Shown here piece by piece: positions 31,338-54,912 of a stretch of DNA of 64,000 bases. The notes under the pieces are model-generated. The model saw nothing but the letters and a program-made list of their open reading frames with translations. It was not told the origin of the DNA and did not search any database. The stretch's first letter is position 1; each line of letters starts with the position of its first letter. Both the position numbers and the translations under genes were made by a program. Location: assembly GCF_000143415.4 (NCBI RefSeq), contig NW_003314310.1, positions 1,172,611 to 1,236,610 of the forward strand, written 5' to 3'. Origin of the DNA: Selaginella moellendorffii. Taxonomy: Eukaryota; Plantae; Lycopodiophyta.

Positions 31338-34300
31338 TCACGTACGTACAAGTGCGGGTTCGGAATCTACAGCTTCAGTACAGGCTGCCTCCACAGCTAA
31401 AGTTTTTGCTTTCCCTGGACAAGGATCTGTTCCAAAATTCTTCCAGAATATCTCGAAGGAACAGCTCTGTCTACCAATGCAAGCCTGCGCAAGGAATAGT
31501 TATAGTTGCTATGTGCAAACAAAGGACAGGCTTTCTTTATTACCTTCTCCACAATGGTTTCAGATTCCAAAGCGTGGCAGCTCCCTTTTTGGAAGGCCCC
31601 ACATCGACCCTTCGGATTTCCAAAGCTGGCGAAGAAAATGGAGGAAATGAATTGGCCTGGAGAGCAGCTTAGCCCGAGCTCTGGCAGAGATGAGAATTGT
31701 GCAACAGGTGGCAAGCTGTACTCTGAAACTTGAGCGCACACTCTGTCGACTACTCTTGATGCAAATGAGACACCGCTAACGTTCCCTCCAATCTCTTCCA
31801 GTAAAACCAGTGTATTCTTCTCGTTTACCAGCCACTCTCGTGGAACGTGATACCTTGTAAACAAAGAGAGGAGAAAGTGAGCTGGCAAGTTTCAACAACA
31901 AAAATCGACAACCAATCGACGTACCACTCTTGCGATGGAAGGCCACAGCTAGAAAGGCATTTTGAGCTATAATATGTTCCACGGTAATCACATCTGTCTG
32001 AACACCCGGTCGAGGGGGCAGTGATGACGGGCCAGAACCTGCCCAGGCTGTGTCCATTCACCCAAGCTTGGCCTTTGCCCATGCTACCCAGATGGATGGC
32101 AACAGGATCATCACCGTCGGGTATGTTGAAGTTTGCCTGGAAATGTGAACTTTTCTGTAATGGCGAAACCGAGCATGGAAATTGTTGTACCTTGTACCAC
32201 ACCAAAGGCTGAAAAAAAGGTAATGAGGTTGTCGAGGACCATGTTATCGCATCATGCTCTCCGTTTAGACCAACCTGCACTTCGTAAATTGTAGTTATAT
32301 GTTGGAGCAAACCTTAGCTTAGCAAACCTGATGTAGCCACAGTGCTGAAGTCAAGTTACGTGTCCCCGTTGAAAGCCCTTGTATCCAAATAGACCCGGTG
32401 ATGCCTGCTCCGTGGGTTTCCAAGTGAGCGCCGTAGTTCTACATGCAAAGTACTACTTATGTCACATGGTAGCTGGCTAGCAACTATACTTTCCACCTGT
32501 AAGCCCACAGTTGCACTGAGAATCGCCAGATGATTAACTCCTGCTTTCAGATGAATAGGCTGTTGGACTCTTGCATATAGTCCACCAGATTTCAGGGTAC
32601 TGGTGCTTCCTGCTTCATGAATGAGACTGTGAAGTTCGAGAAACTACAGCCAACCTGCAAACTCTCCGTTGACAAAAATGTGTACCATATCTCGCATGCT
32701 CGTGATTACAAGAACAGGATCTCCTCCCTTTAGCTCCTGATCCAAGATTTCAAACCTAGCACGGAACAAGAGCTTCGAAAAAGTGGACGTGAAAGAAGCA
32801 CTTTGTACCTCGTAGAGTACCACATGTAATCTGTAGAATCATTTGTCGTACTTATTTGCTCAAGCAATGCATGAGCGAGAATCTTGTTGATTCCAGAACC
32901 TCCGACAGGCTCTTGAAACCATTCCCAAGCCAGTTGCTCGACCAATCCAGGAGTATATGAGCCAGATACCTCTTCAATTAAAGAAGGTTTCTGCACAGCT
33001 ACCATTTTCGTTACAGACGTTTGAGCTGAAACCTGCAAAAGTGATCCAATGAGCATAATAAACACTAGAAAACCTTCCGAGAAACCTGCGCAGTGTTGAA
33101 CACCACGTTGCGACAGTCGGGAAGAATACTGACAGACCATGGAGGCAAATTATAAACTTTTCCACCAAACTTGACAGAGGCACTGGAGGTGTCAATGTTG
33201 GCCAAGAATGCTGCGCACGGGGTGGCTAAGTTTGAGAAATTTGCTTCAAGGCTGCCATCCGAGTAGACGTGAGCCTGTACCATCTGGAATTATGGAAACT
33301 CCGGTACAATGGAGATGGTTATACCTCCTGCATGCGGCCCAAGGTGTAATAGACTGGATCATTCGAGGTCAATGCAGTCTCGCAAAGCTTAAGGGCCGCA
33401 TGTAACTCCTTTAGGTGACCCCACTTTGGCTGTCTAAGCATTCCTGTAAGGAATAAGAAGTAAGCATTTCCTCGAAGAGTAGTAGGCATGCATGTACCAA
33501 ACTCATCAAGTGGCGCATCGTAGTCGTAACTAGTGGTAATGAAGGGGCCTCCAGATGTTCGACCAAAGTTAGTACCTCCGAAGTACTGGCATCTCTCTGG
33601 CATGAGTAAACGTTGCTCAAGATCGTGCAGCGTACGTACCATATAGTAGTTTTGAGCAACACCTCCTCTCTGGAAGAAACGGGCCACCGCAAAGGCCACG
33701 TCTTCAACAGTTCTATAGGGAGCAGCCTCGCCCCATGATTGATACCTGGAAAGGAGACATCAGATGGCGGATACATAACACGAGAATGAAGAACAACAAA
33801 CCAGCCACTCCAGTTTTCCGTCCACATTGCTGGCTTGTCTCTGGAGTTCGGCTTCCAGCCATCACAATAATACCCGTTGCATGTGTTTATCTTCAGCACA
33901 AACAGAAAAGAGTCTGTGAGTGCCACAAAAGAATGCAGAGTGACCACCACTCACAATGTAATCCGGAGCATCGGGCTGCTTGCACATTATCCAGGGGACA
34001 CCTGTTTCTAAGTCTTTGGCCATTCGTGCTGCCCAAAGCATATAAGTCTTTCCATTGATTCCATAAGACCCTTGAACATTCCCATATTCATTCTCAATCT
34101 GCCAGCCCGAATATCAAAGGTTTTAGCATCAAGAAAAGAAGTGCCAGTCACCTGAGAGAATAGAACTGGACCGCCCTGGGATGCAAACAGTTGCTCCGAT
34201 TTCACCATGTCCACAATCTTCCTCACAAACTCCTCCATCTTGTCCTGCACACAGCCACCACGCGACTTGTTATTCAGAGGCACGGCTTTCGTTGACAGGC

Positions 34301-34909
34301 AACGTCGTCAACCTCGAAAGCTCTATTGTGTGTTCTAAACTGAATGCCAGGCAATTTCAGCAGCCAAGCCGGGAAGCCGCTGCAGGAAAAGAAGAGAAGA
34401 CAAACAGGATTAGCTAGAAAGCAAGAGAGCTTGAAGCGTACCCGAAGTTCCATTCCGCACAGACATAAGGTCCGATTCTGAGGTTGACGTAGAGGCCAGC
34501 TTGGTGCACCAGCTTGAGGAAGCGGATGAGGTCGTAGCGGCCTTGGAAATTATACTGTCACAAGCACATGTCGAGTTGATGAATGCTTTGTTTCCACTTA
34601 CGATTCCGGGCGAGGGCTCATGACCATCCCAGAAGACGTACGTGTCGATCATGTCGAGACCGCCCTCCTTGGCGTTGCGGATCAGGGCCGGCCACATCTG
34701 CAAGCACGAGAGCGCATGAACAAAAGGAGCTCGCGCTTGAGAATGTAGAGAACCTGGGGAGAAGCGCGGGGGTAGTGAATGCATCCGGAGATGAGAATTC
34801 TACGCTGCCCGCCGATGATGATAGCTCTGTGGTCGTAAGAGATGTTGGTGGCGCTGGCCCCCGCCAAGAGCAGCGGCAACGCGAGGAGGAGCAGCAGGAA
34901 TCTGGCCAT
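31338..34909 (-). CDS. BGAL: Beta-galactosidase (GH35) with C-terminal SUEL lectin domain, multi-exon
   Basis: Signal peptide, [67 protein letters not shown] and [12 protein letters not shown]. Confidence 0.93.
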
Positions 34910-34972
34910 GGCCGGTCCCCTTTAGGAAGGGTATAGTGTGCAGTAATTAGAAGCTAGGTCTATGGAAAGGCG

Positions 34973-35413
34973 ATGGCGAGGAGGGCGGCAACGCTGCTGG
35001 TGCCTGTACGAGGGATGAGCGGGCTGCCGTTTTTCGGGCCGGACACACTGGAAGGTTTGTTTGAGAAGTTCTTGGCTCCCAAGTCTTCCAAGAAGCGGCA
35101 GGACGACGATTTGGTGGCGGAGAGGGCACGGCTGACGAGCACGCGCAGGGAGGCAATCGAGCTCTACCGCGACATCTTTCGCGCGTCGAGGGCATTCGCG
35201 TGGCCCAACGAGGACGGCATTCTGTGGCGGGACCTGTTGCGCGCGAGCGCGAGGCAGGAGTTTGAGCAAGCGCGGCACGAGAGGGACCCGGAGGTGATCG
35301 CCAAGCTGCTCGTCACCGGCAGGGACGCGGTGGAGGCGGCGGTGGACAAGTTGGTGGACAAGCACAAGGCGGCCATGGCGCGAGATCGGGTCTCAGGCGA
35401 GAGAGGCGAGTAG
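34973..35413 (+). CDS. LYR-motif (Complex1_LYR) mitochondrial protein, intronless
   Basis: AIELYRDIFR...ARQEFEQARHERDPEVI LYR signature and an Arg-rich presequence-like N-terminus. Confidence 0.85.
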   Translation: MARRAATLLVPVRGMSGLPFFGPDTLEGLFEKFLAPKSSKKRQDDDLVAERARLTSTRREAIELYRDIFRASRAFAWPNEDGILWRDLLRASARQEFEQARHERDPEVIAKLLVTGRDAVEAAVDKLVDKHKAAMARDRVSGERGE

Positions 35414-35423
35414 CGCAAGGATT

Positions 35424-35651
35424 ATGGAGCATGAGTTGCAGCAGCAGCAGCAGCAGCAGCGCGGGGTGAAACGCAAGCTGCGGGTGCTGCAAGAGGAGAG
35501 CTGCGCACTTCTGGAGGAGCTCGAGTCCACCCAGTCCGAGGTCAAGGCACTGCAGCAGGAGAAGATGGAGCTGCTGGACAGGCTGCTGGTGCTGGAGGGA
35601 TTGGCCCACAATCCATACCCTCCCTTCATTCGTCGCTCGCAGCAGCACTAG
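35424..35651 (+). CDS. 75-aa coiled-coil protein resembling the INO80E/TFPT N-terminal domain
   Basis: KRKLRVLQEESCALLEELESTQSEVKALQQEKMELLDRLLVLEG parallels the KRKL..L..E.....EEL.........L..D/EK..LLDRLL..E pattern recalled for INO80E. GC3-rich codons as in neighbouring genes. Confidence 0.7.
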   Translation: MEHELQQQQQQQRGVKRKLRVLQEESCALLEELESTQSEVKALQQEKMELLDRLLVLEGLAHNPYPPFIRRSQQH

Positions 35652-35891
35652 GTAGGATGGCGTAGGCGCACTATTCCCATAAGATCAAGGTGGTATCAAA
35701 AGATATGCGCCCTGGCTGCCCTAGTCGTCGGCGCTATCGGGGCCGTTGCCTGGCCCAGCCGAAGCACAGCCGTCGGATCCGCGCAGGACTGACTGAAAAT
35801 AAATAAAAATCGCTGTTTGCGCTTTCCTCTCTCCTCCTAGGTCTTTCTCTCACTCCCTTGCTCTTGCGCTGTTCATCTTCGCTCCGCTCCC

Positions 35892-36413
35892 ATGGCTGCC
35901 AATCCCAAGGTCTTCTTCGACATCGCCATCGGCGGTAGCCCCGCCGGGCGCATCGTGATGGAGCTGTACGCAGACACTGTGCCCAAGACGGCGGAGAACT
36001 TCCGCGCGCTGTGCACGGGTGAGAAGGGTATCGGCAAGAGCGGCAAGCCGCTGCACTACAAGGGCTCCAAGTTCCACCGCGTCATCCCCGACTTCATGTG
36101 CCAGGGCGGCGACTTCACGGCCGGGAACGGCACGGGCGGCGAGTCCATCTACGGCATGAAGTTCGCGGACGAGAACTTCAACAAGAAGCACACGGGCGCG
36201 GGCGTGCTGTCCATGGCCAACGCCGGGGCCAACACCAACGGATCCCAGTTCTTCCTCTGCACCGTGCCCTGCTCCTGGCTCGATGGCAAGCACGTCGTCT
36301 TCGGCCAGGTTGTGGAGGGGCTCAACATCGTCAAGGACATCGAGAAGGTGGGCAGCTCCTCGGGCAAGACGAGCAAGCCCGTGGTGATTGCCGACTGTGG
36401 CCAGCTCTCTTAG
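35892..36413 (+). CDS. CYP: Cytosolic cyclophilin (peptidyl-prolyl cis-trans isomerase), intronless
   Basis: [47 protein letters not shown] and [12 protein letters not shown]. Confidence 0.97.
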
Positions 36414-36601
36414 ATCTATCTGCAGCGAGCGAGCTGCTTGACTTGATTGTTGTGTCCTTTCTATGCTAGCTGCTCTATCTCTCTCTCTCTCTTTTGCATA
36501 TCTCTTGCTTGTTTGTTGGTTCGAGCTCTGGAATGAAAAACGAAAAAAAAGGATTAAAGCTCCCAATCTCTCTCTCACAAGCTTAGGTCGTTTGATTGAC
36601 T

Positions 36602-38147
36602 ATGGCATCGTCCTCGCGTTGCCCTCTGCTGGATTGCGGCAGCAGAGCGTGGCCGCGGGCAACCTGTAGCCCGGAACGGCAAGCGCATGGCTCAGGTGAG
36701 CAGGCTAGAGCCTTCCTTTGCTCCTCGCAAGTAAGCCTATCATTGGTTGCAGCAAGGACGTTGGTTTATGCCAGGAAGAAATCGGGATTTGCAGAGCTGC
36801 TGCTCCAGAAAAGGTTGGGTGCAAGTTGCAAGTTGCAGCGCATTGTTTGTAATCCATCCGTGTGGTTCGTTTTCTCCAGGCAAGGCGAACAGCCGCATGG
36901 CAAGCACTTGAAGTTGAAGCCTGGAAGAGTGTCCCCTCCGCTCAGCGTTCCCGCAGACATCCCCAGGCCACCGTATGTTGGTTCAGCCGCAGCGCCTGCT
37001 TTCAACATGGAGCCGCAAGTCCACGACGAGAGTGGTGTGGCGAGAATGCGAGCCGCAGGGGAGCTAGCTGCCCGAGTTCGCGACTTTGCTGGTAGCCTCA
37101 TCAAGGTACGAAAGGCTCGAACGCAAAGTGTTTCGGCGCTTTGACTGCCTTTGTGGTGCAGCCAGGTGTAACGACGGACGAGATCGACAAGGCAGTGCAC
37201 AAGATGATTGTTGAAGCGGGTGCATATCCATCGCCTCTCGGATACGGTGGGTTTCCGAAGAGCGTGTGCACGTCCGTGAACGAATGCATCTGCCACGGTA
37301 TACCCGATTCTCGTCCGCTTCAGGTAACACAAGTTAAGTCCCAGACTAAGTAAGAATCCTCGACCACACCAGGACGGCGACATTATAAACATCGACGTGA
37401 CTGTCTATCTGAATGTATGTAAGCCACAGAGGTGCCAAATCTCACACGGTTTTCTTTCAGGGATATCACGGGGACACATCCGCAACTTTCCTTTGCGGCA
37501 CCGTCAGTGACGAGGCCAAGCGGCTGGTAGAGGTGCGGAGAAAGAGAAACTTTTGTGTGGCTGGTTGCTGAGTTTTGTGCATAGCCAGGTGACTCGCGAG
37601 GCCCTGGACAAGGCAATCGCAGTTTGTGGCCCAGGTGTGGAATTCAAAAAGATCGGGAGGACCATCCAGTGAGGCCTTTCTTTTGCTTTGTTATCGTGTT
37701 TTCATCCTTTTTGTCTCTTGCTTTTGTCGCTCGCCACCAGTGATGTTGCTGATAAGTTCAAGTACGGGGTGGTGAAGCGATTTGTTGGGCATGGAATCGG
37801 CACCATATTCCATTGCGCTCCCTCCATCCTGCATTTCCGTAAGGAAGGAGAGTGTCGCAATCCAGCTCTAACACCGAAGCGTTGGTACCTGGCTTTACAG
37901 GAAATAATGAACCTGGTCGCATGCAGATTGGTCAAACGTTCACGATTGGTAAGAGTGCTCACGTTGATCTCGTTTCCCCTCCGACTCTCTTGTTCCAGAG
38001 CCAATGCTGACAATGGGGAAGCCGGACGACCTGATCTGGCCGGACAACTGGACCGCGGTGACGGTCGACGGCAGCCTTTCTGCGCAGTTCGAGCACACCC
38101 TGCTCGTCACAGGGGACGGTGTCCAGGTATTGACGCGAGCACCATAA
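36602..38147 (+). CDS. Organellar methionine aminopeptidase 1 (MAP1D-like), multi-exon
   Basis: [45 protein letters not shown] and [11 protein letters not shown]. Transit peptide. Stop TAA at 38145-38147. Confidence 0.9.
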
Positions 38148-53238: not shown

Positions 53239-54912
53239 ATGCAGCGGATGGAGCTGCACGATGGTGGCCGTCAAGCCTACCACGCCGAGTATGACCAACT
53301 TCAGAGGAGGCTCAAGAGAATAGACGATGAGCAAGACCCGGCTGCAGCCTTGACGGTACTACTCAAGCGGTGTCGCCAGGTGGAGCATGGCAAGCTTATT
53401 CACGCCCACATTGCCACCAGTGAGGTCTACAAGCGCGACAAGCTTCTCCTCAACATGCTCGTGGAGATGTATGGCAAGTGCGGCAGTATAGCGGAGGCTT
53501 GCTGTGTCTTCGACTGCATGTCTGTGAGAAACGTGCACTCGTGGACGATTATGCTGGTGGCACTGGCGGAGAATGGAGAGTGCAAGCAGGCTGTGAGACT
53601 GTTCCGGGAGATGCTCCTGGAAGGTGTCAAGCCCAACGCCTTCACGCTGACCAGCGCCTTGACTGCCTGCGGCCACGCTGGGGATGCAGACGAGGGCCAC
53701 AGGATTGACGGAATGATCGCGTGCACCCAGCTCCGGGTGGACGTTGCCGTGTGCAACGCTCTCATCAGCATGTATGGAAAATGCGGGTGGCTTGACCAAG
53801 CCAAGGCTGTCTTTCACTCCATGCCATGCAAGAACGACATCTCGTGGACTGCAATGATCGATGCCTACTGCCAGCGGAGGGAGTGGGCACGAGCACTGGA
53901 ATGCTTCCACGGCATGGATCTCGAAGGGGTGAGGGCGTGCGAGATGAGCCTCTTAGCCGCGCTGGAAGCTGTGCGTGGGGTGGAGCGGCTAGAGCAGGGG
54001 GAGCACATCCACGCACGCATCGTCGAGCAGGGATGGGGATCGGATCCATTCCTTTGCACGGCACTGGTGGCTTTGTACTCGAGGTGCGGCGCCACAGAGG
54101 GAGCGAGAGCAGTGTTTCGAAAGATGGACAGCCTAGAGGTTGAGTCGTGGAACGCCATCATGTCGGCAGCAGGGGGAGGGGAGGCCCTGGAACTGTTTAG
54201 TAGAATGCTGCAGCTGGGCGTCAAGCCGGTGGCTATAAGTGTGGTGGCAGCGATGGAGGCGTGTGGCAAAGTGTGTGATGGTGCCCGCACAAGAAAGCTC
54301 GAGGAGGCGATTGTGTGGGACGCGTTTGACGCTAACCCTGTGGTTACCTCGGCGCTCATGGATGCGTATGCCAAGTGCGGGCGGCTGGACGATGCTCGGC
54401 GGGTGTTCGACACGTACCGCTGCATGGGCATGTGCTCTTGCGTGGATGTGGTGGCATGGAGCACCTTGATCGCTGCTTATGCTGAGAGTGGAGACAGCGA
54501 GTACGCGCTGTGGCTGCTGTACACAATGGAGCTGCATGGTATCCAACCCAACGCCGTCACCCTACTCAGCATTCTCTTCGCTTGCAGCCATGCTGGGTGG
54601 GTGGAGCATGGATGCCACTTGTTGGCATCAATGTGGAGGGATCGCGGCTTGTACCCTTCGTCACAGCACTACAGCTGCGTGGTGGACATGCTTGGACGTG
54701 CTGGATGGTTGCTTGATGCCGAGCGTCTGGTTTGCTCTATGCCAATCCAGCCCGATTCTGTGGCTCTCACAAGCCTGCTAGGAGCTTACACGCTCCATGG
54801 TGGATTACGTCTAAGCCCATACTTTCAGCAGATCATGGGTTATGCGACATTGCCTCATAATACTGACAGTTCACGGAAGGAACGGATTACAATCGAATCT
54901 CAGCTTCATTGA
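53239..54912 (+). CDS. PLS-class pentatricopeptide repeat protein with partial E domain, no DYW
   Basis: Repeated MYGKCG..A..VF..M...SW..M motifs, HYSCVVDMLGRAG and MPIQPDSV..TSLLGA..LHG. Confidence 0.9.
   Translation: MQRMELHDGGRQAYHAEYDQLQRRLKRIDDEQDPAAALTVLLKRCRQVEHGKLIHAHIATSEVYKRDKLLLNMLVEMYGKCGSIAEACCVFDCMSVRNVHSWTIMLVALAENGECKQAVRLFREMLLEGVKPNAFTLTSALTACGHAGDADEGHRIDGMIACTQLRVDVAVCNALISMYGKCGWLDQAKAVFHSMPCKNDISWTAMIDAYCQRREWARALECFHGMDLEGVRACEMSLLAALEAVRGVERLEQGEHIHARIVEQGWGSDPFLCTALVALYSRCGATEGARAVFRKMDSLEVESWNAIMSAAGGGEALELFSRMLQLGVKPVAISVVAAMEACGKVCDGARTRKLEEAIVWDAFDANPVVTSALMDAYAKCGRLDDARRVFDTYRCMGMCSCVDVVAWSTLIAAYAESGDSEYALWLLYTMELHGIQPNAVTLLSILFACSHAGWVEHGCHLLASMWRDRGLYPSSQHYSCVVDMLGRAGWLLDAERLVCSMPIQPDSVALTSLLGAYTLHGGLRLSPYFQQIMGYATLPHNTDSSRKERITIESQLH

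What the first reader, a model, noticed from the sequence alone, without database searches (positions are those of the whole stretch)
34973..35651. Candidate bicistronic locus: LYR protein followed 10 nt later by an INO80E-like microprotein
Seen: the LYR stop (TAG 35411-35413) is separated from the next ATG (35424, different frame) by only CGCAAGGATT. Both ORFs are intronless and have coding-like GC3 bias. I found no out-of-frame ATG in ORF1, and the first AATAAA after ORF2 is at 35798 (it may instead be the cyclophilin TATA). There is no room for a 3' UTR, terminator or promoter between the ORFs. Known: polycistronic nuclear mRNAs are documented in green algae but are regarded as rare in land plants. 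Inference: one mRNA makes both a mitochondrial LYR protein and a probable chromatin-remodeller subunit, by reinitiation or leaky scanning. The alternative is an ORF2 promoter buried in the LYR CDS.
Basis: partly seen in the sequence, partly recalled or inferred. Interest (0 to 1): 0.8.

Follow-up and report, generated by a model that had tools for sequence, protein, structure and literature searches.

The report
Hidden conserved gene behind spikemoss LYR gene
In the spikemoss Selaginella moellendorffii, an unannotated 75-residue gene from a conserved but uncharacterised land-plant family starts 10 bases after the stop of a mitochondrial LYR assembly-factor gene, so the two probably share one messenger RNA, a layout that is rare in land plants and is not yet proven here by single-molecule or translation data.

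Summary
ORF1 (34973-35413) is a LYR protein and probably the CIAF1 orthologue. ORF2 (35424-35651) starts 10 nt after the ORF1 stop, in another frame.

ORF2 is not a chance ORF. It matches the conserved C-terminal coiled coil of a land-plant family of about 145-240 aa, all named "hypothetical" (best E 3.5e-13, 65% identity; Psilotum, Diphasiastrum, Marchantia, angiosperms). It diverges no faster than full-length members. It lacks the family's roughly 90-residue basic N-terminus, and no gene is called there on the other haplotype. The INO80E likeness is consistent across the family (25 of 41 members) but always below Pfam's threshold.

Both haplotypes keep the spacer, the frame and a stop codon. 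RNA assemblies from four studies run unspliced through LYR, ORF2 and the cyclophilin gene. They also merge neighbouring genes, so they cannot define a transcript.

- The absence of out-of-frame ATGs in ORF1 is not significant (P = 0.34).
- ORF1 has a strong start context and two in-frame AUGs.
- The adjacency was not found in the other plants I examined.

My reading is a real gene on a structurally bicistronic mRNA, with its mode of translation open. The scan has noted other candidate bicistrons elsewhere in this genome, but not this locus.

The parts
34682..34909 (-). First exon region of the divergent neighbour, a GH35 beta-galactosidase-like gene (ATG at 34909). It lies only 63 nt from the LYR ATG. 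The exon proper is 34754-34909.
   Evidence: ORF. Pfam Glyco_hydro_35 matches the first 24 model positions, E 0.0076. The intron 34698-34753 is spliced out in RNA contigs.
34962..35018 (+). Possible 18-codon upstream ORF. Its start context is weak (TCTATGG). It overlaps LYR AUG1, and its stop overlaps AUG2 (ATGA). It counts only if the TSS lies upstream of 34962.
   Evidence: Identical in the other haplotype. Its role is inference only.
34973..35413 (+). ORF1: an intronless 146-aa LYR-motif protein (LYR at residues 64-66, R94/F97) and probably the orthologue of the plant complex I assembly factor CIAF1.
   Evidence: Pfam PF05347 E 4.3e-13. Orthologues occur across land plants, and the S. moellendorffii LOC9643738 protein is 98% identical. 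Size and motif position match CIAF1 in PMC12257267.
35414..35423 (+). 10-nt inter-ORF spacer CGCAAGGATT.
   Evidence: Identical in both haplotypes.
35424..35651 (+). ORF2: an unannotated 75-aa protein. It consists of a short poly-Q N-terminus, the conserved coiled coil and the NPYPPF tail of an uncharacterised land-plant family that is INO80E-like below threshold. Its start context is ATTATGG.
   Evidence: No gene is called here on the other haplotype. The word search did not find even the ORF itself.
35439..35459 (+). (CAG)7 poly-glutamine tract in ORF2. It is one CAG longer in the other haplotype, an in-frame indel.
35652..35670 (+). 19-nt indel between haplotypes, immediately after the ORF2 stop. 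The other haplotype keeps a stop at the same codon (TAA).
   Evidence: Also seen in the RNA contig of run X5 (table 4).
35798..35807 (+). AATAAATAAA: the only canonical poly(A)-signal-like motif after ORF2. It could equally be the A/T-rich core promoter element of the cyclophilin gene.
   Evidence: The RNA depth figures are higher in the bin 35806-35972.
35892..36413 (+). Downstream neighbour: an intronless cyclophilin gene (173 aa).
   Evidence: Pfam Pro_isomerase E 9.9e-50.

Best explanation
ORF2 is a real, selected gene that is not annotated. It is a trimmed member of a conserved land-plant family, reduced to that family's coiled-coil domain, and it sits 10 nt behind the intronless LYR (CIAF1-like) gene of Selaginella moellendorffii.

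No polyadenylation signal or promoter can fit in 10 nt, and the first AATAAA lies 147 nt after ORF2. The LYR mRNA therefore runs through ORF2, which makes the locus structurally bicistronic (shown up to RNA continuity; the rest is inferred).

I infer that ORF2 is translated from this mRNA at a low level. The likely route is reinitiation close to the LYR stop, or after short-ORF translation events, rather than classical leaky scanning past three well-placed AUGs. The product would be a small nuclear coiled-coil protein acting like the conserved C-terminal module of its family. That module distantly resembles the N-terminal helix of INO80E/TFPT.
For: - Homology: 42 proteins at E<1e-3, four at E<1e-10, covering residues 12-70 of ORF2. 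All nine invariant columns of the family alignment are kept. So is the NP[YF]PP[FVY] tail shared with Diphasiastrum, Psilotum and Marchantia.
- Constraint: the ORF2 domain is 57-63% identical to fern and lycophyte members, the same range as full-length members among themselves (59-68%).
- Haplotypes: the spacer is identical, the CAG indel is in frame, and the 19-nt indel begins just after the stop and leaves a stop in place.
- Composition: GC3 is 0.84, like ORF1, and the ORF2 AUG has A at -3 and G at +4.
- RNA: contigs from four studies, in which the neighbours' introns are spliced out, cover 34754-36467/36543 without a gap or joint.
- Signals: no poly(A)-like hexamer lies between 35300 and 35797, and there is no TATA in 35300-35900.
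- Precedent: LYR proteins recur on green-algal bicistrons, and 6-10-nt spacers support translation of a second ORF in Chlamydomonas (PMC7896298).
Against: - No read-level, long-read, CAGE, Ribo-seq or peptide evidence is available. The contigs merge the divergent GH35 gene and the cyclophilin gene, so continuity does not prove one molecule.
- The ORF1 start context is strong, and two further in-frame AUGs (35015, 35375) precede ORF2. Green-algal bicistrons instead show weak ORF1 contexts and AUG depletion (PMC11892635).
- Reinitiation after a 146-codon ORF is normally inefficient (established knowledge).
- ATG depletion is not significant.
- ORF2 lacks the family's N-terminal half.
- One haplotype has H instead of the conserved Y/F in the tail motif.
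- The arrangement was not found in the other plants I could inspect.
Confidence: 0.45

Rival explanations
1. Nested promoter. ORF2 is a real gene but is expressed mainly from its own transcription start inside the 3' part of the LYR coding sequence. This would give a short monocistronic mRNA. The ORF2 copy on the LYR mRNA would be a silent passenger in its 3' UTR.
For: This region is extremely compact and promoters must overlap neighbours' transcribed sequence. Only 63 nt separate the divergent GH35 and LYR start codons, RNA contigs bridge them, and the cyclophilin core promoter lies in the LYR/ORF2 3' region. The strong ORF1 context and three AUGs disfavour scanning to ORF2. ORF2 has a good start context of its own.
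Against: There is no TATA within 35300-35423. By eye the stretch is purine- and G+C-rich, without a pyrimidine patch. The coarse contig depths give no sign that ORF2 is covered more deeply than LYR: in X5 the LYR contig is at 61 and the ORF2+cyclophilin contig at 424, a figure that its cyclophilin part explains. These are weak arguments, because many plant promoters lack such elements.
Confidence: 0.3
2. Untranslated relic. ORF2 is the recently stranded 3' part of a family member that lost its N-terminal half and its promoter during genome compaction. It would now be merely LYR 3' UTR sequence that has not yet decayed.
For: About 90 N-terminal residues typical of the family are missing, including the MQDP start and the basic KPRKKK stretch. 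The ORF is unannotated. A Y-to-H change sits in the conserved tail in one haplotype, and the CAG tract is unstable. The position downstream of a long ORF is poor for translation.
Against: All invariant residues are intact, and divergence equals that of functional orthologues over about 400 My. An AUG in good context sits exactly at the domain boundary. Both indels between haplotypes spare the frame and the stop. GC3 of 0.84 is maintained.
Confidence: 0.2
3. One protein. LYR and ORF2 are joined into a fusion protein by a programmed frameshift, by readthrough, or by an unnoticed intron.
For: Only the short distance between the ORFs and the fact that they are on the same strand.
Against: ORF2 is in frame +1. 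Its frame is closed by TGA at 35295-35297, so a shift would have to occur within the last 38 LYR codons. The LYR C-terminus is of normal length compared with its orthologues. No joint in this interval is listed in RNA contigs of four studies. Family members elsewhere are stand-alone proteins.
Confidence: 0.03

Closest known systems
Green-algal nuclear bicistronic loci (Chlamydomonas, Chromochloris, Auxenochlorella; Gallaher et al. 2021 PMC7896298; Duenas et al. 2025 PMC11892635)
   Same: Two conserved ORFs lie on one strand with a very short spacer, and the ORFs are small. An LYR-motif mitochondrial protein is one partner, and the 2021 paper reports LYR proteins as recurrent on bicistrons. The two ORFs are in unrelated frames.
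   Different: Here ORF1 is the longer ORF, has a strong start context, and is followed by two more AUGs before ORF2. In the algae ORF1 is the shorter one and has a weak context with AUG depletion. There is no Iso-Seq or proteomic proof here, and the organism is a vascular plant.
CDC26-TTM3 bicistronic transcript of land plants (recalled from Lorenzo-Orts et al. 2019, Nature Plants; not re-read here)
   Same: A conserved small protein and a second, functionally unrelated protein are encoded on one plant mRNA.
   Different: In CDC26-TTM3 the small protein is the upstream cistron, which is compatible with leaky scanning or uORF-type reinitiation, and the arrangement is conserved across land plants. 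Here the small protein is downstream, and the arrangement was found only in S. moellendorffii.
Translated downstream ORFs (dORFs) in 3' UTRs (recalled from Wu et al. 2020, EMBO J; not re-read here)
   Same: A short ORF lies in what is formally the 3' UTR of a canonical gene.
   Different: Typical dORFs are not conserved as peptides. ORF2 belongs to an ancient protein family with independent full-length genes in other plants.
INO80E / TFPT N-terminal coiled coil (Pfam PF24237)
   Same: Pfam aligns ORF2 residues 13-54 to model positions 7-48 of 48. 25 of 41 family members hit this model at E<=0.1, more than any other Pfam family.
   Different: All scores are below the gathering threshold. In the plant family the module is C-terminal. 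No link of any family member to an INO80 complex was found in the searchable literature.
CIAF1 (At1g76060), plant-specific LYR assembly factor of mitochondrial complex I
   Same: ORF1 has the LYR domain preceded by a long N-terminal extension, with the LYR tripeptide and R..F about 30 residues downstream. Its angiosperm orthologues are about 158 aa (about 18.5 kDa), like CIAF1. One orthologue carries the name 'LYR family of Fe/S cluster biogenesis protein', a wording I recall from At1g76060 (not checked).
   Different: Orthology was inferred from size, motif position and names. It was not tested against the Arabidopsis sequence itself.

Membership tests
Complex1_LYR (LYRM) proteins | Pfam PF05347 match above the gathering score | tested here: met
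   49.5 bits against a cut-off of 24.8, E 4.3e-13
Complex1_LYR (LYRM) proteins | L-Y-R tripeptide and a downstream R..F motif | tested here: met
   Read directly from the translation: LYR at residues 64-66, R94 and F97
CIAF1 subfamily | Orthology to At1g76060 (long N-terminal extension, LYR near residue 76, about 18.5 kDa) | tested here: inconclusive
   The Brassicaceae orthologue P0029 is 158 aa with LYR at 78-80. The table in PMC12257267 gives 18.5 kDa and LYR 76-78 for CIAF1. The Arabidopsis sequence itself was not compared.
Uncharacterised land-plant coiled-coil family (consensus EYRALRRKYLLLEEES...EKLALLDxLVVLEGL) | Conserved C-terminal coiled coil with invariant L, E, K, LL, L, EGL columns | tested here: met
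   phmmer E 3.5e-13 to 8e-4 for 42 representatives. All nine invariant columns are present. 57-63% identity to fern and lycophyte members.
Uncharacterised land-plant coiled-coil family (consensus EYRALRRKYLLLEEES...EKLALLDxLVVLEGL) | N-terminal half of about 60-170 residues, basic and low-complexity (MQDP..., KPRKKK, SDSLPDSS) | tested here: not met
   ORF2 starts 11 residues before the conserved domain. The upstream reading frame is closed at 35295-35297, and its 42 codons do not look like the family's K/S/P-rich N-terminus by eye.
INO80E (PF24237) | Pfam match above the gathering score | tested here: not met
   20.8 bits against 27.8 for ORF2. The best family member reaches 25.1 bits. 25 of 41 members match at E<=0.1.
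INO80E (PF24237) | Physical association with the INO80 remodeller | not testable with these tools
   No plant literature was found. No solved-structure relative was found.
Nuclear bicistronic mRNA (green-algal type) | Two conserved ORFs on one strand with a short inter-ORF distance | tested here: met
   10 nt. Both ORFs have homologues.
Nuclear bicistronic mRNA (green-algal type) | Single mature transcript molecules spanning both ORFs | tested here: inconclusive
   RNA contigs of four studies are continuous, but they also merge neighbouring genes. Raw or long reads were not available.
Nuclear bicistronic mRNA (green-algal type) | Weak Kozak-like context at ORF1 | tested here: not met
   GCGATGG, with G at -3 and G at +4. 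Criterion taken from PMC11892635.
Nuclear bicistronic mRNA (green-algal type) | AUG depletion before ORF2 | tested here: inconclusive
   0 out-of-frame and 2 in-frame AUGs. The synonymous-shuffle expectation is 0.86 out-of-frame, P = 0.34. The neighbouring cyclophilin gene has only 1.
Nuclear bicistronic mRNA (green-algal type) | Both proteins made from the one mRNA | not testable with these tools
   Needs Ribo-seq, proteomics or a reporter.

The most novel reading that the evidence does not exclude
Selaginella keeps an algal-type set of truly bicistronic nuclear mRNAs for small proteins, again including an LYR protein, and this locus is an obligate bicistron.

One specific version is a ribosome relay. 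A weak-context uAUG at 34962 opens an 18-codon uORF that runs past both LYR start codons. The next 357 nt hold no AUG in any frame. Ribosomes resume at 35375, a 12-codon in-frame mini-ORF, and terminate 10 nt before the ORF2 AUG. Start-codon choice at the 5' end would then set the ratio between a mitochondrial complex I assembly factor and a nuclear coiled-coil protein.
Probability: 0.2. Interest if true: 0.75.

Novelty: new member of a known kind. Interest (0 to 1): 0.5.

Why it matters
Few bicistronic nuclear mRNAs encoding two conserved proteins are documented in land plants, whereas green algae have hundreds, often involving LYR proteins. If this locus is confirmed, it would be a lycophyte case with the small protein in the unfavourable downstream position. 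Together with the other candidates the scan noted in this genome, it would suggest that compact plant genomes use this layout more often than annotation shows.

Independently of the mechanism, two results stand. A conserved gene is missing from the S. moellendorffii annotation. An uncharacterised, land-plant-wide protein family is defined here, whose minimal functional module may be this 60-residue coiled coil.

Tried and rejected
1. Word-index protein search with ORF2 found nothing, not even the ORF itself. The exhaustive HMMER search was needed.
2. I looked for an ORF2 homologue downstream of LYR in transcript or genomic contigs of other plants (L002-L010, L014, L015) and found none. L014 ends 20 nt after the LYR stop and is uninformative.
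3. I looked for LYR next to the ORF2 homologue in Diphasiastrum (L013, 6 kb each side) and on two fern/lycophyte-like transcripts (L011, L012) and found none.
4. ATG depletion as a signature of leaky scanning is rejected as not significant.
5. The motif UGGGA (recalled as TURBS motif 1 of viral termination-reinitiation) is absent from 35300-35900.
6. Contig depth figures are contig-wide means contaminated by the cyclophilin and GH35 genes, so they cannot be used to compare LYR and ORF2 levels.
7. A profile search of solved structures gave only chance coiled-coil and homeobox hits.
8. Literature searches for Selaginella bicistrons or for plant INO80E found nothing relevant.
9. A chance ORF, and a fusion by frameshift or splicing, are rejected (see rivals).
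10. I could not search the rest of the S. moellendorffii genome, or other Selaginella species, for a full-length paralogue.

Full report
**Where this is.** The best match of ORF1 is [quoted passage not shown] at 98% identity. The matching contig, GL377568.1 of GCA_000143415.2, was fetched as L001. It aligns with the window at 98% identity with small indels, so it is the other haplotype of the same locus.

The gene order in this region is:
- a GH35 beta-galactosidase-like gene on the minus strand, with its ATG at 34909;
- LYR ORF1 on the plus strand, with its ATG at 34973, only 63 nt away;
- ORF2;
- an intronless cyclophilin gene (35892-36413);
- an M24 peptidase gene.

**The observation.** The stated coordinates are right.
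- ORF1 is 34973-35413 (146 aa, stop TAG).
- The spacer is CGCAAGGATT.
- ORF2 is 35424-35651 (75 aa), in frame +1 relative to ORF1.
- AATAAA occurs at 35798 and 35802, and no other canonical or common variant hexamer lies between 35300 and 35797.
- GC3 is 0.84 in both ORFs, against 0.56 overall G+C in the following spacer.

**What ORF1 is.** It matches Pfam Complex1_LYR above threshold (E 4.3e-13). Orthologues of 125-165 aa occur in conifers, angiosperms, Sphagnum and others. The LYR tripeptide is at residues 64-66, with R94 and F97 downstream.

Among the twelve Arabidopsis LYRM proteins tabulated in PMC12257267, only CIAF1 (At1g76060) has the motif that far from the N-terminus: it is 18.5 kDa with LYR at 76-78. 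CIAF1 is a plant-specific complex I assembly factor. The Brassicaceae orthologue of ORF1 (P0029) is 158 aa with LYR at 78-80. I therefore read ORF1 as the probable CIAF1 orthologue. This is an inference; I did not compare the Arabidopsis sequence.

**What ORF2 is.** The word-index search found nothing, not even the ORF itself. No gene is called at this position on the other haplotype. So it is unannotated.

The exhaustive HMMER search against 1.84 billion representatives found 42 proteins at E<1e-3 and four at E<1e-10. The best is 3.5e-13 with 65% identity over residues 12-68. Named members come from Psilotum nudum (169 aa), Diphasiastrum complanatum (166 aa), Marchantia (211 and 241 aa), Cuscuta and Amborella. 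All are "hypothetical" or "uncharacterized". A profile search adds more than 250 further proteins, mostly angiosperm, of about 140-170 aa and without any precomputed Pfam domain.

The family has two parts:
- a variable, basic, low-complexity N-terminal half (MQDPR..., KPRKKK, SDSLPDSS);
- a conserved C-terminal coiled coil (EYRALRRKYLLLEEES...EKLALLDxLVVLEGL).

ORF2 corresponds to the C-terminal module only. It keeps all nine invariant columns. It also keeps the NPYPPF tail that is shared with lycophyte, fern and liverwort members but not with seed plants. Its domain is 57-63% identical to fern and lycophyte members, and full-length members are 59-68% identical to each other. There is thus no sign of relaxed constraint.

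The Diphasiastrum gene is an intronless stand-alone gene with no LYR within 6 kb. Two fern/lycophyte-like transcripts (L011, L012) are monocistronic and encode the full N-terminus.

**Is it INO80E-like?** PF24237 is the best Pfam hit of ORF2 (E 5e-4, model positions 7-48 of 48). It is also the family hit by most members: 25 of 41 at E<=0.1, best 2.2e-5, against 6 for the next family. Every score is below the gathering threshold. In the plant family the module is C-terminal. A profile search of solved structures gave only chance hits. I found no literature linking any member to INO80. "INO80E-like coiled coil" is a fair description. "INO80 subunit" is not shown.

**Haplotype comparison.** The spacer, the ORF2 AUG and the upstream ATG at 34962 are identical in both haplotypes. 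ORF2 differs in three ways:
- one extra CAG, which is in frame;
- one Y-to-H change in the tail motif;
- a 19-nt indel that begins directly after the stop and leaves a stop (TAA) at the same codon.

This fits a maintained ORF, but the numbers are small. ORF1 itself carries three non-synonymous and no synonymous differences.

**RNA evidence.** I laid four runs from four studies on 32800-37800. They are kept only as assembled contigs. In all four, the introns of the GH35 gene (CT..AC) and of the M24 peptidase gene (GT..AG) are skipped, so the material is RNA. No joint is listed between 34754 and 36467. Contigs run through LYR, the spacer, ORF2 and on into the cyclophilin gene: a single contig covers 34754-36543 in X10 and 34754-36467 in X2. 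Elsewhere the contigs break at heterozygous sites (35391, the CAG tract).

The same contigs also join LYR to the divergent GH35 exon and to the cyclophilin gene. They therefore show that the whole interval is transcribed and unspliced, not that one molecule carries both ORFs. Depth values are contig-wide means dominated by the neighbours and cannot rank LYR against ORF2. No raw-read run was offered.

**Mechanism.** One point is essentially forced by the sequence. A complete LYR mRNA cannot end within 10 nt of its stop, and the first poly(A)-like signal is 147 nt beyond ORF2, so LYR mRNAs carry ORF2.

What is open is whether ORF2 is translated from them.
- Zero out-of-frame ATGs is what GC3-rich codon usage gives anyway. 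The synonymous-shuffle mean is 0.86 (P = 0.34), and the cyclophilin gene has only one.
- The ORF1 start has G at -3 and G at +4.
- Two further in-frame AUGs (35015, and 35375 in a strong context) lie before ORF2.

Curated green-algal bicistrons differ: they show weak ORF1 contexts, ORF1 shorter than ORF2, and AUG depletion (PMC11892635).

Reinitiation after 146 codons is normally inefficient. However, termination 10 nt before an AUG in good context (ATTATGG) is a favourable geometry. Gallaher et al. cite work showing that 6-10-nt spacers work well for second-ORF expression in Chlamydomonas (PMC7896298).

A further possibility is pure inference. An 18-codon uORF starts at 34962 in a weak context and ends at 35018, overlapping both LYR AUGs. 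It is followed by 357 nt without any ATG, then by a 12-codon in-frame mini-ORF (35375-35413). This could relay reinitiation-competent ribosomes to ORF2, provided the TSS lies upstream of 34962.

The main rival is a transcription start for ORF2 inside the LYR CDS. That is not far-fetched here, because promoters in this region must overlap neighbouring genes: the divergent ATGs are 63 nt apart, and the cyclophilin promoter lies in the LYR/ORF2 3' region. No TATA lies upstream of ORF2, and by eye the stretch has no pyrimidine patch. That is weak evidence, since many plant promoters lack both.

**Conservation of the arrangement.** I could examine LYR orthologue transcripts or loci from a conifer-like plant (L002-L005), two other plants (L006-L009, L015) and Sphagnum (L010). 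None has an ORF2 homologue downstream. No tool here could reach other Selaginella species or the rest of this genome. I therefore do not know how old the arrangement is, or whether a full-length paralogue exists elsewhere.

**Comparison with known systems.** The closest kind is the nuclear bicistron of Viridiplantae. In green algae these are widespread, and LYR proteins are notably recurrent on them (PMC7896298). In land plants only a few are established, and from memory CDC26-TTM3 has the small protein upstream. This locus would be a new member with an unusual polarity: the long ORF with a good start context comes first, and the small conserved ORF comes second.

The scan's own notes list other candidate bicistrons in this genome: APC15-Pol iota, ASDURF-DUF177, and a methyltransferase-PPR pair in this same window. 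I did not test them and do not count them as support.

**Verdict.**
- ORF2 is a real but truncated and unannotated member of an uncharacterised land-plant family (confidence about 0.8).
- A structurally bicistronic LYR-ORF2 mRNA is very likely (about 0.85).
- Translation of ORF2 from that mRNA is unproven (about 0.45, against 0.3 for a nested promoter and 0.2 for a silent relic).
- Interest is moderate at 0.5. It is a good, testable candidate and a useful annotation fix, not yet a demonstrated exception.

Noticed in passing
window 34909-34973: The start codons of the divergent GH35 beta-galactosidase-like gene (minus strand, ATG at 34909) and the LYR gene (plus strand, ATG at 34973) are only 63 nt apart. 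RNA contigs bridge the two genes. Their 5' ends must therefore be very short or overlap, and each core promoter must lie in the other gene's transcribed sequence.
   Followed up: partly
window 35798-35891: The AATAAATAAA motif that could serve as the LYR/ORF2 poly(A) signal lies about 90 nt before the cyclophilin ATG and is followed by a CT-rich stretch typical of a plant core promoter or 5' UTR. The same few bases may act as terminator for one gene and promoter for the next. The RNA depth figures are higher in the bin 35806-35972.
   Followed up: no
window 53239-54912: An intronless 557-aa PPR protein ORF (Pfam PPR_2 E 4e-47). The scan's note s1-419827 says a methyltransferase stop lies 8 nt before its start. 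I confirmed only the PPR ORF, not the upstream stop.
   Followed up: partly
L011:228-719 (Logan SRR2103735 contig): The collection's gene call for this family member (P0046, 82 aa) is truncated. The same frame is open from an MQDP start about 80 codons upstream, which gives a full-length protein of about 164 aa. Short representatives of this family in the databases may therefore be calling artefacts rather than natural short forms like ORF2.
   Followed up: partly
proteins P0105, P0118, P0146, P0203: Some angiosperm members of the uncharacterised family carry names such as 'Lectin-domain containing receptor kinase', 'RNA-binding protein 8A' or 'Vacuolar protein sorting/targeting protein like', although they are about 150 aa and have no such domain on record. 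These are probably annotation errors.
   Followed up: no
L010:3001-4673 compared with window 34973-35413: The Sphagnum LYR orthologue spans 1.7 kb for 140 aa, so it has introns. The Selaginella gene is intronless, which may mean intron loss or a retrocopy origin in Selaginella.
   Followed up: no
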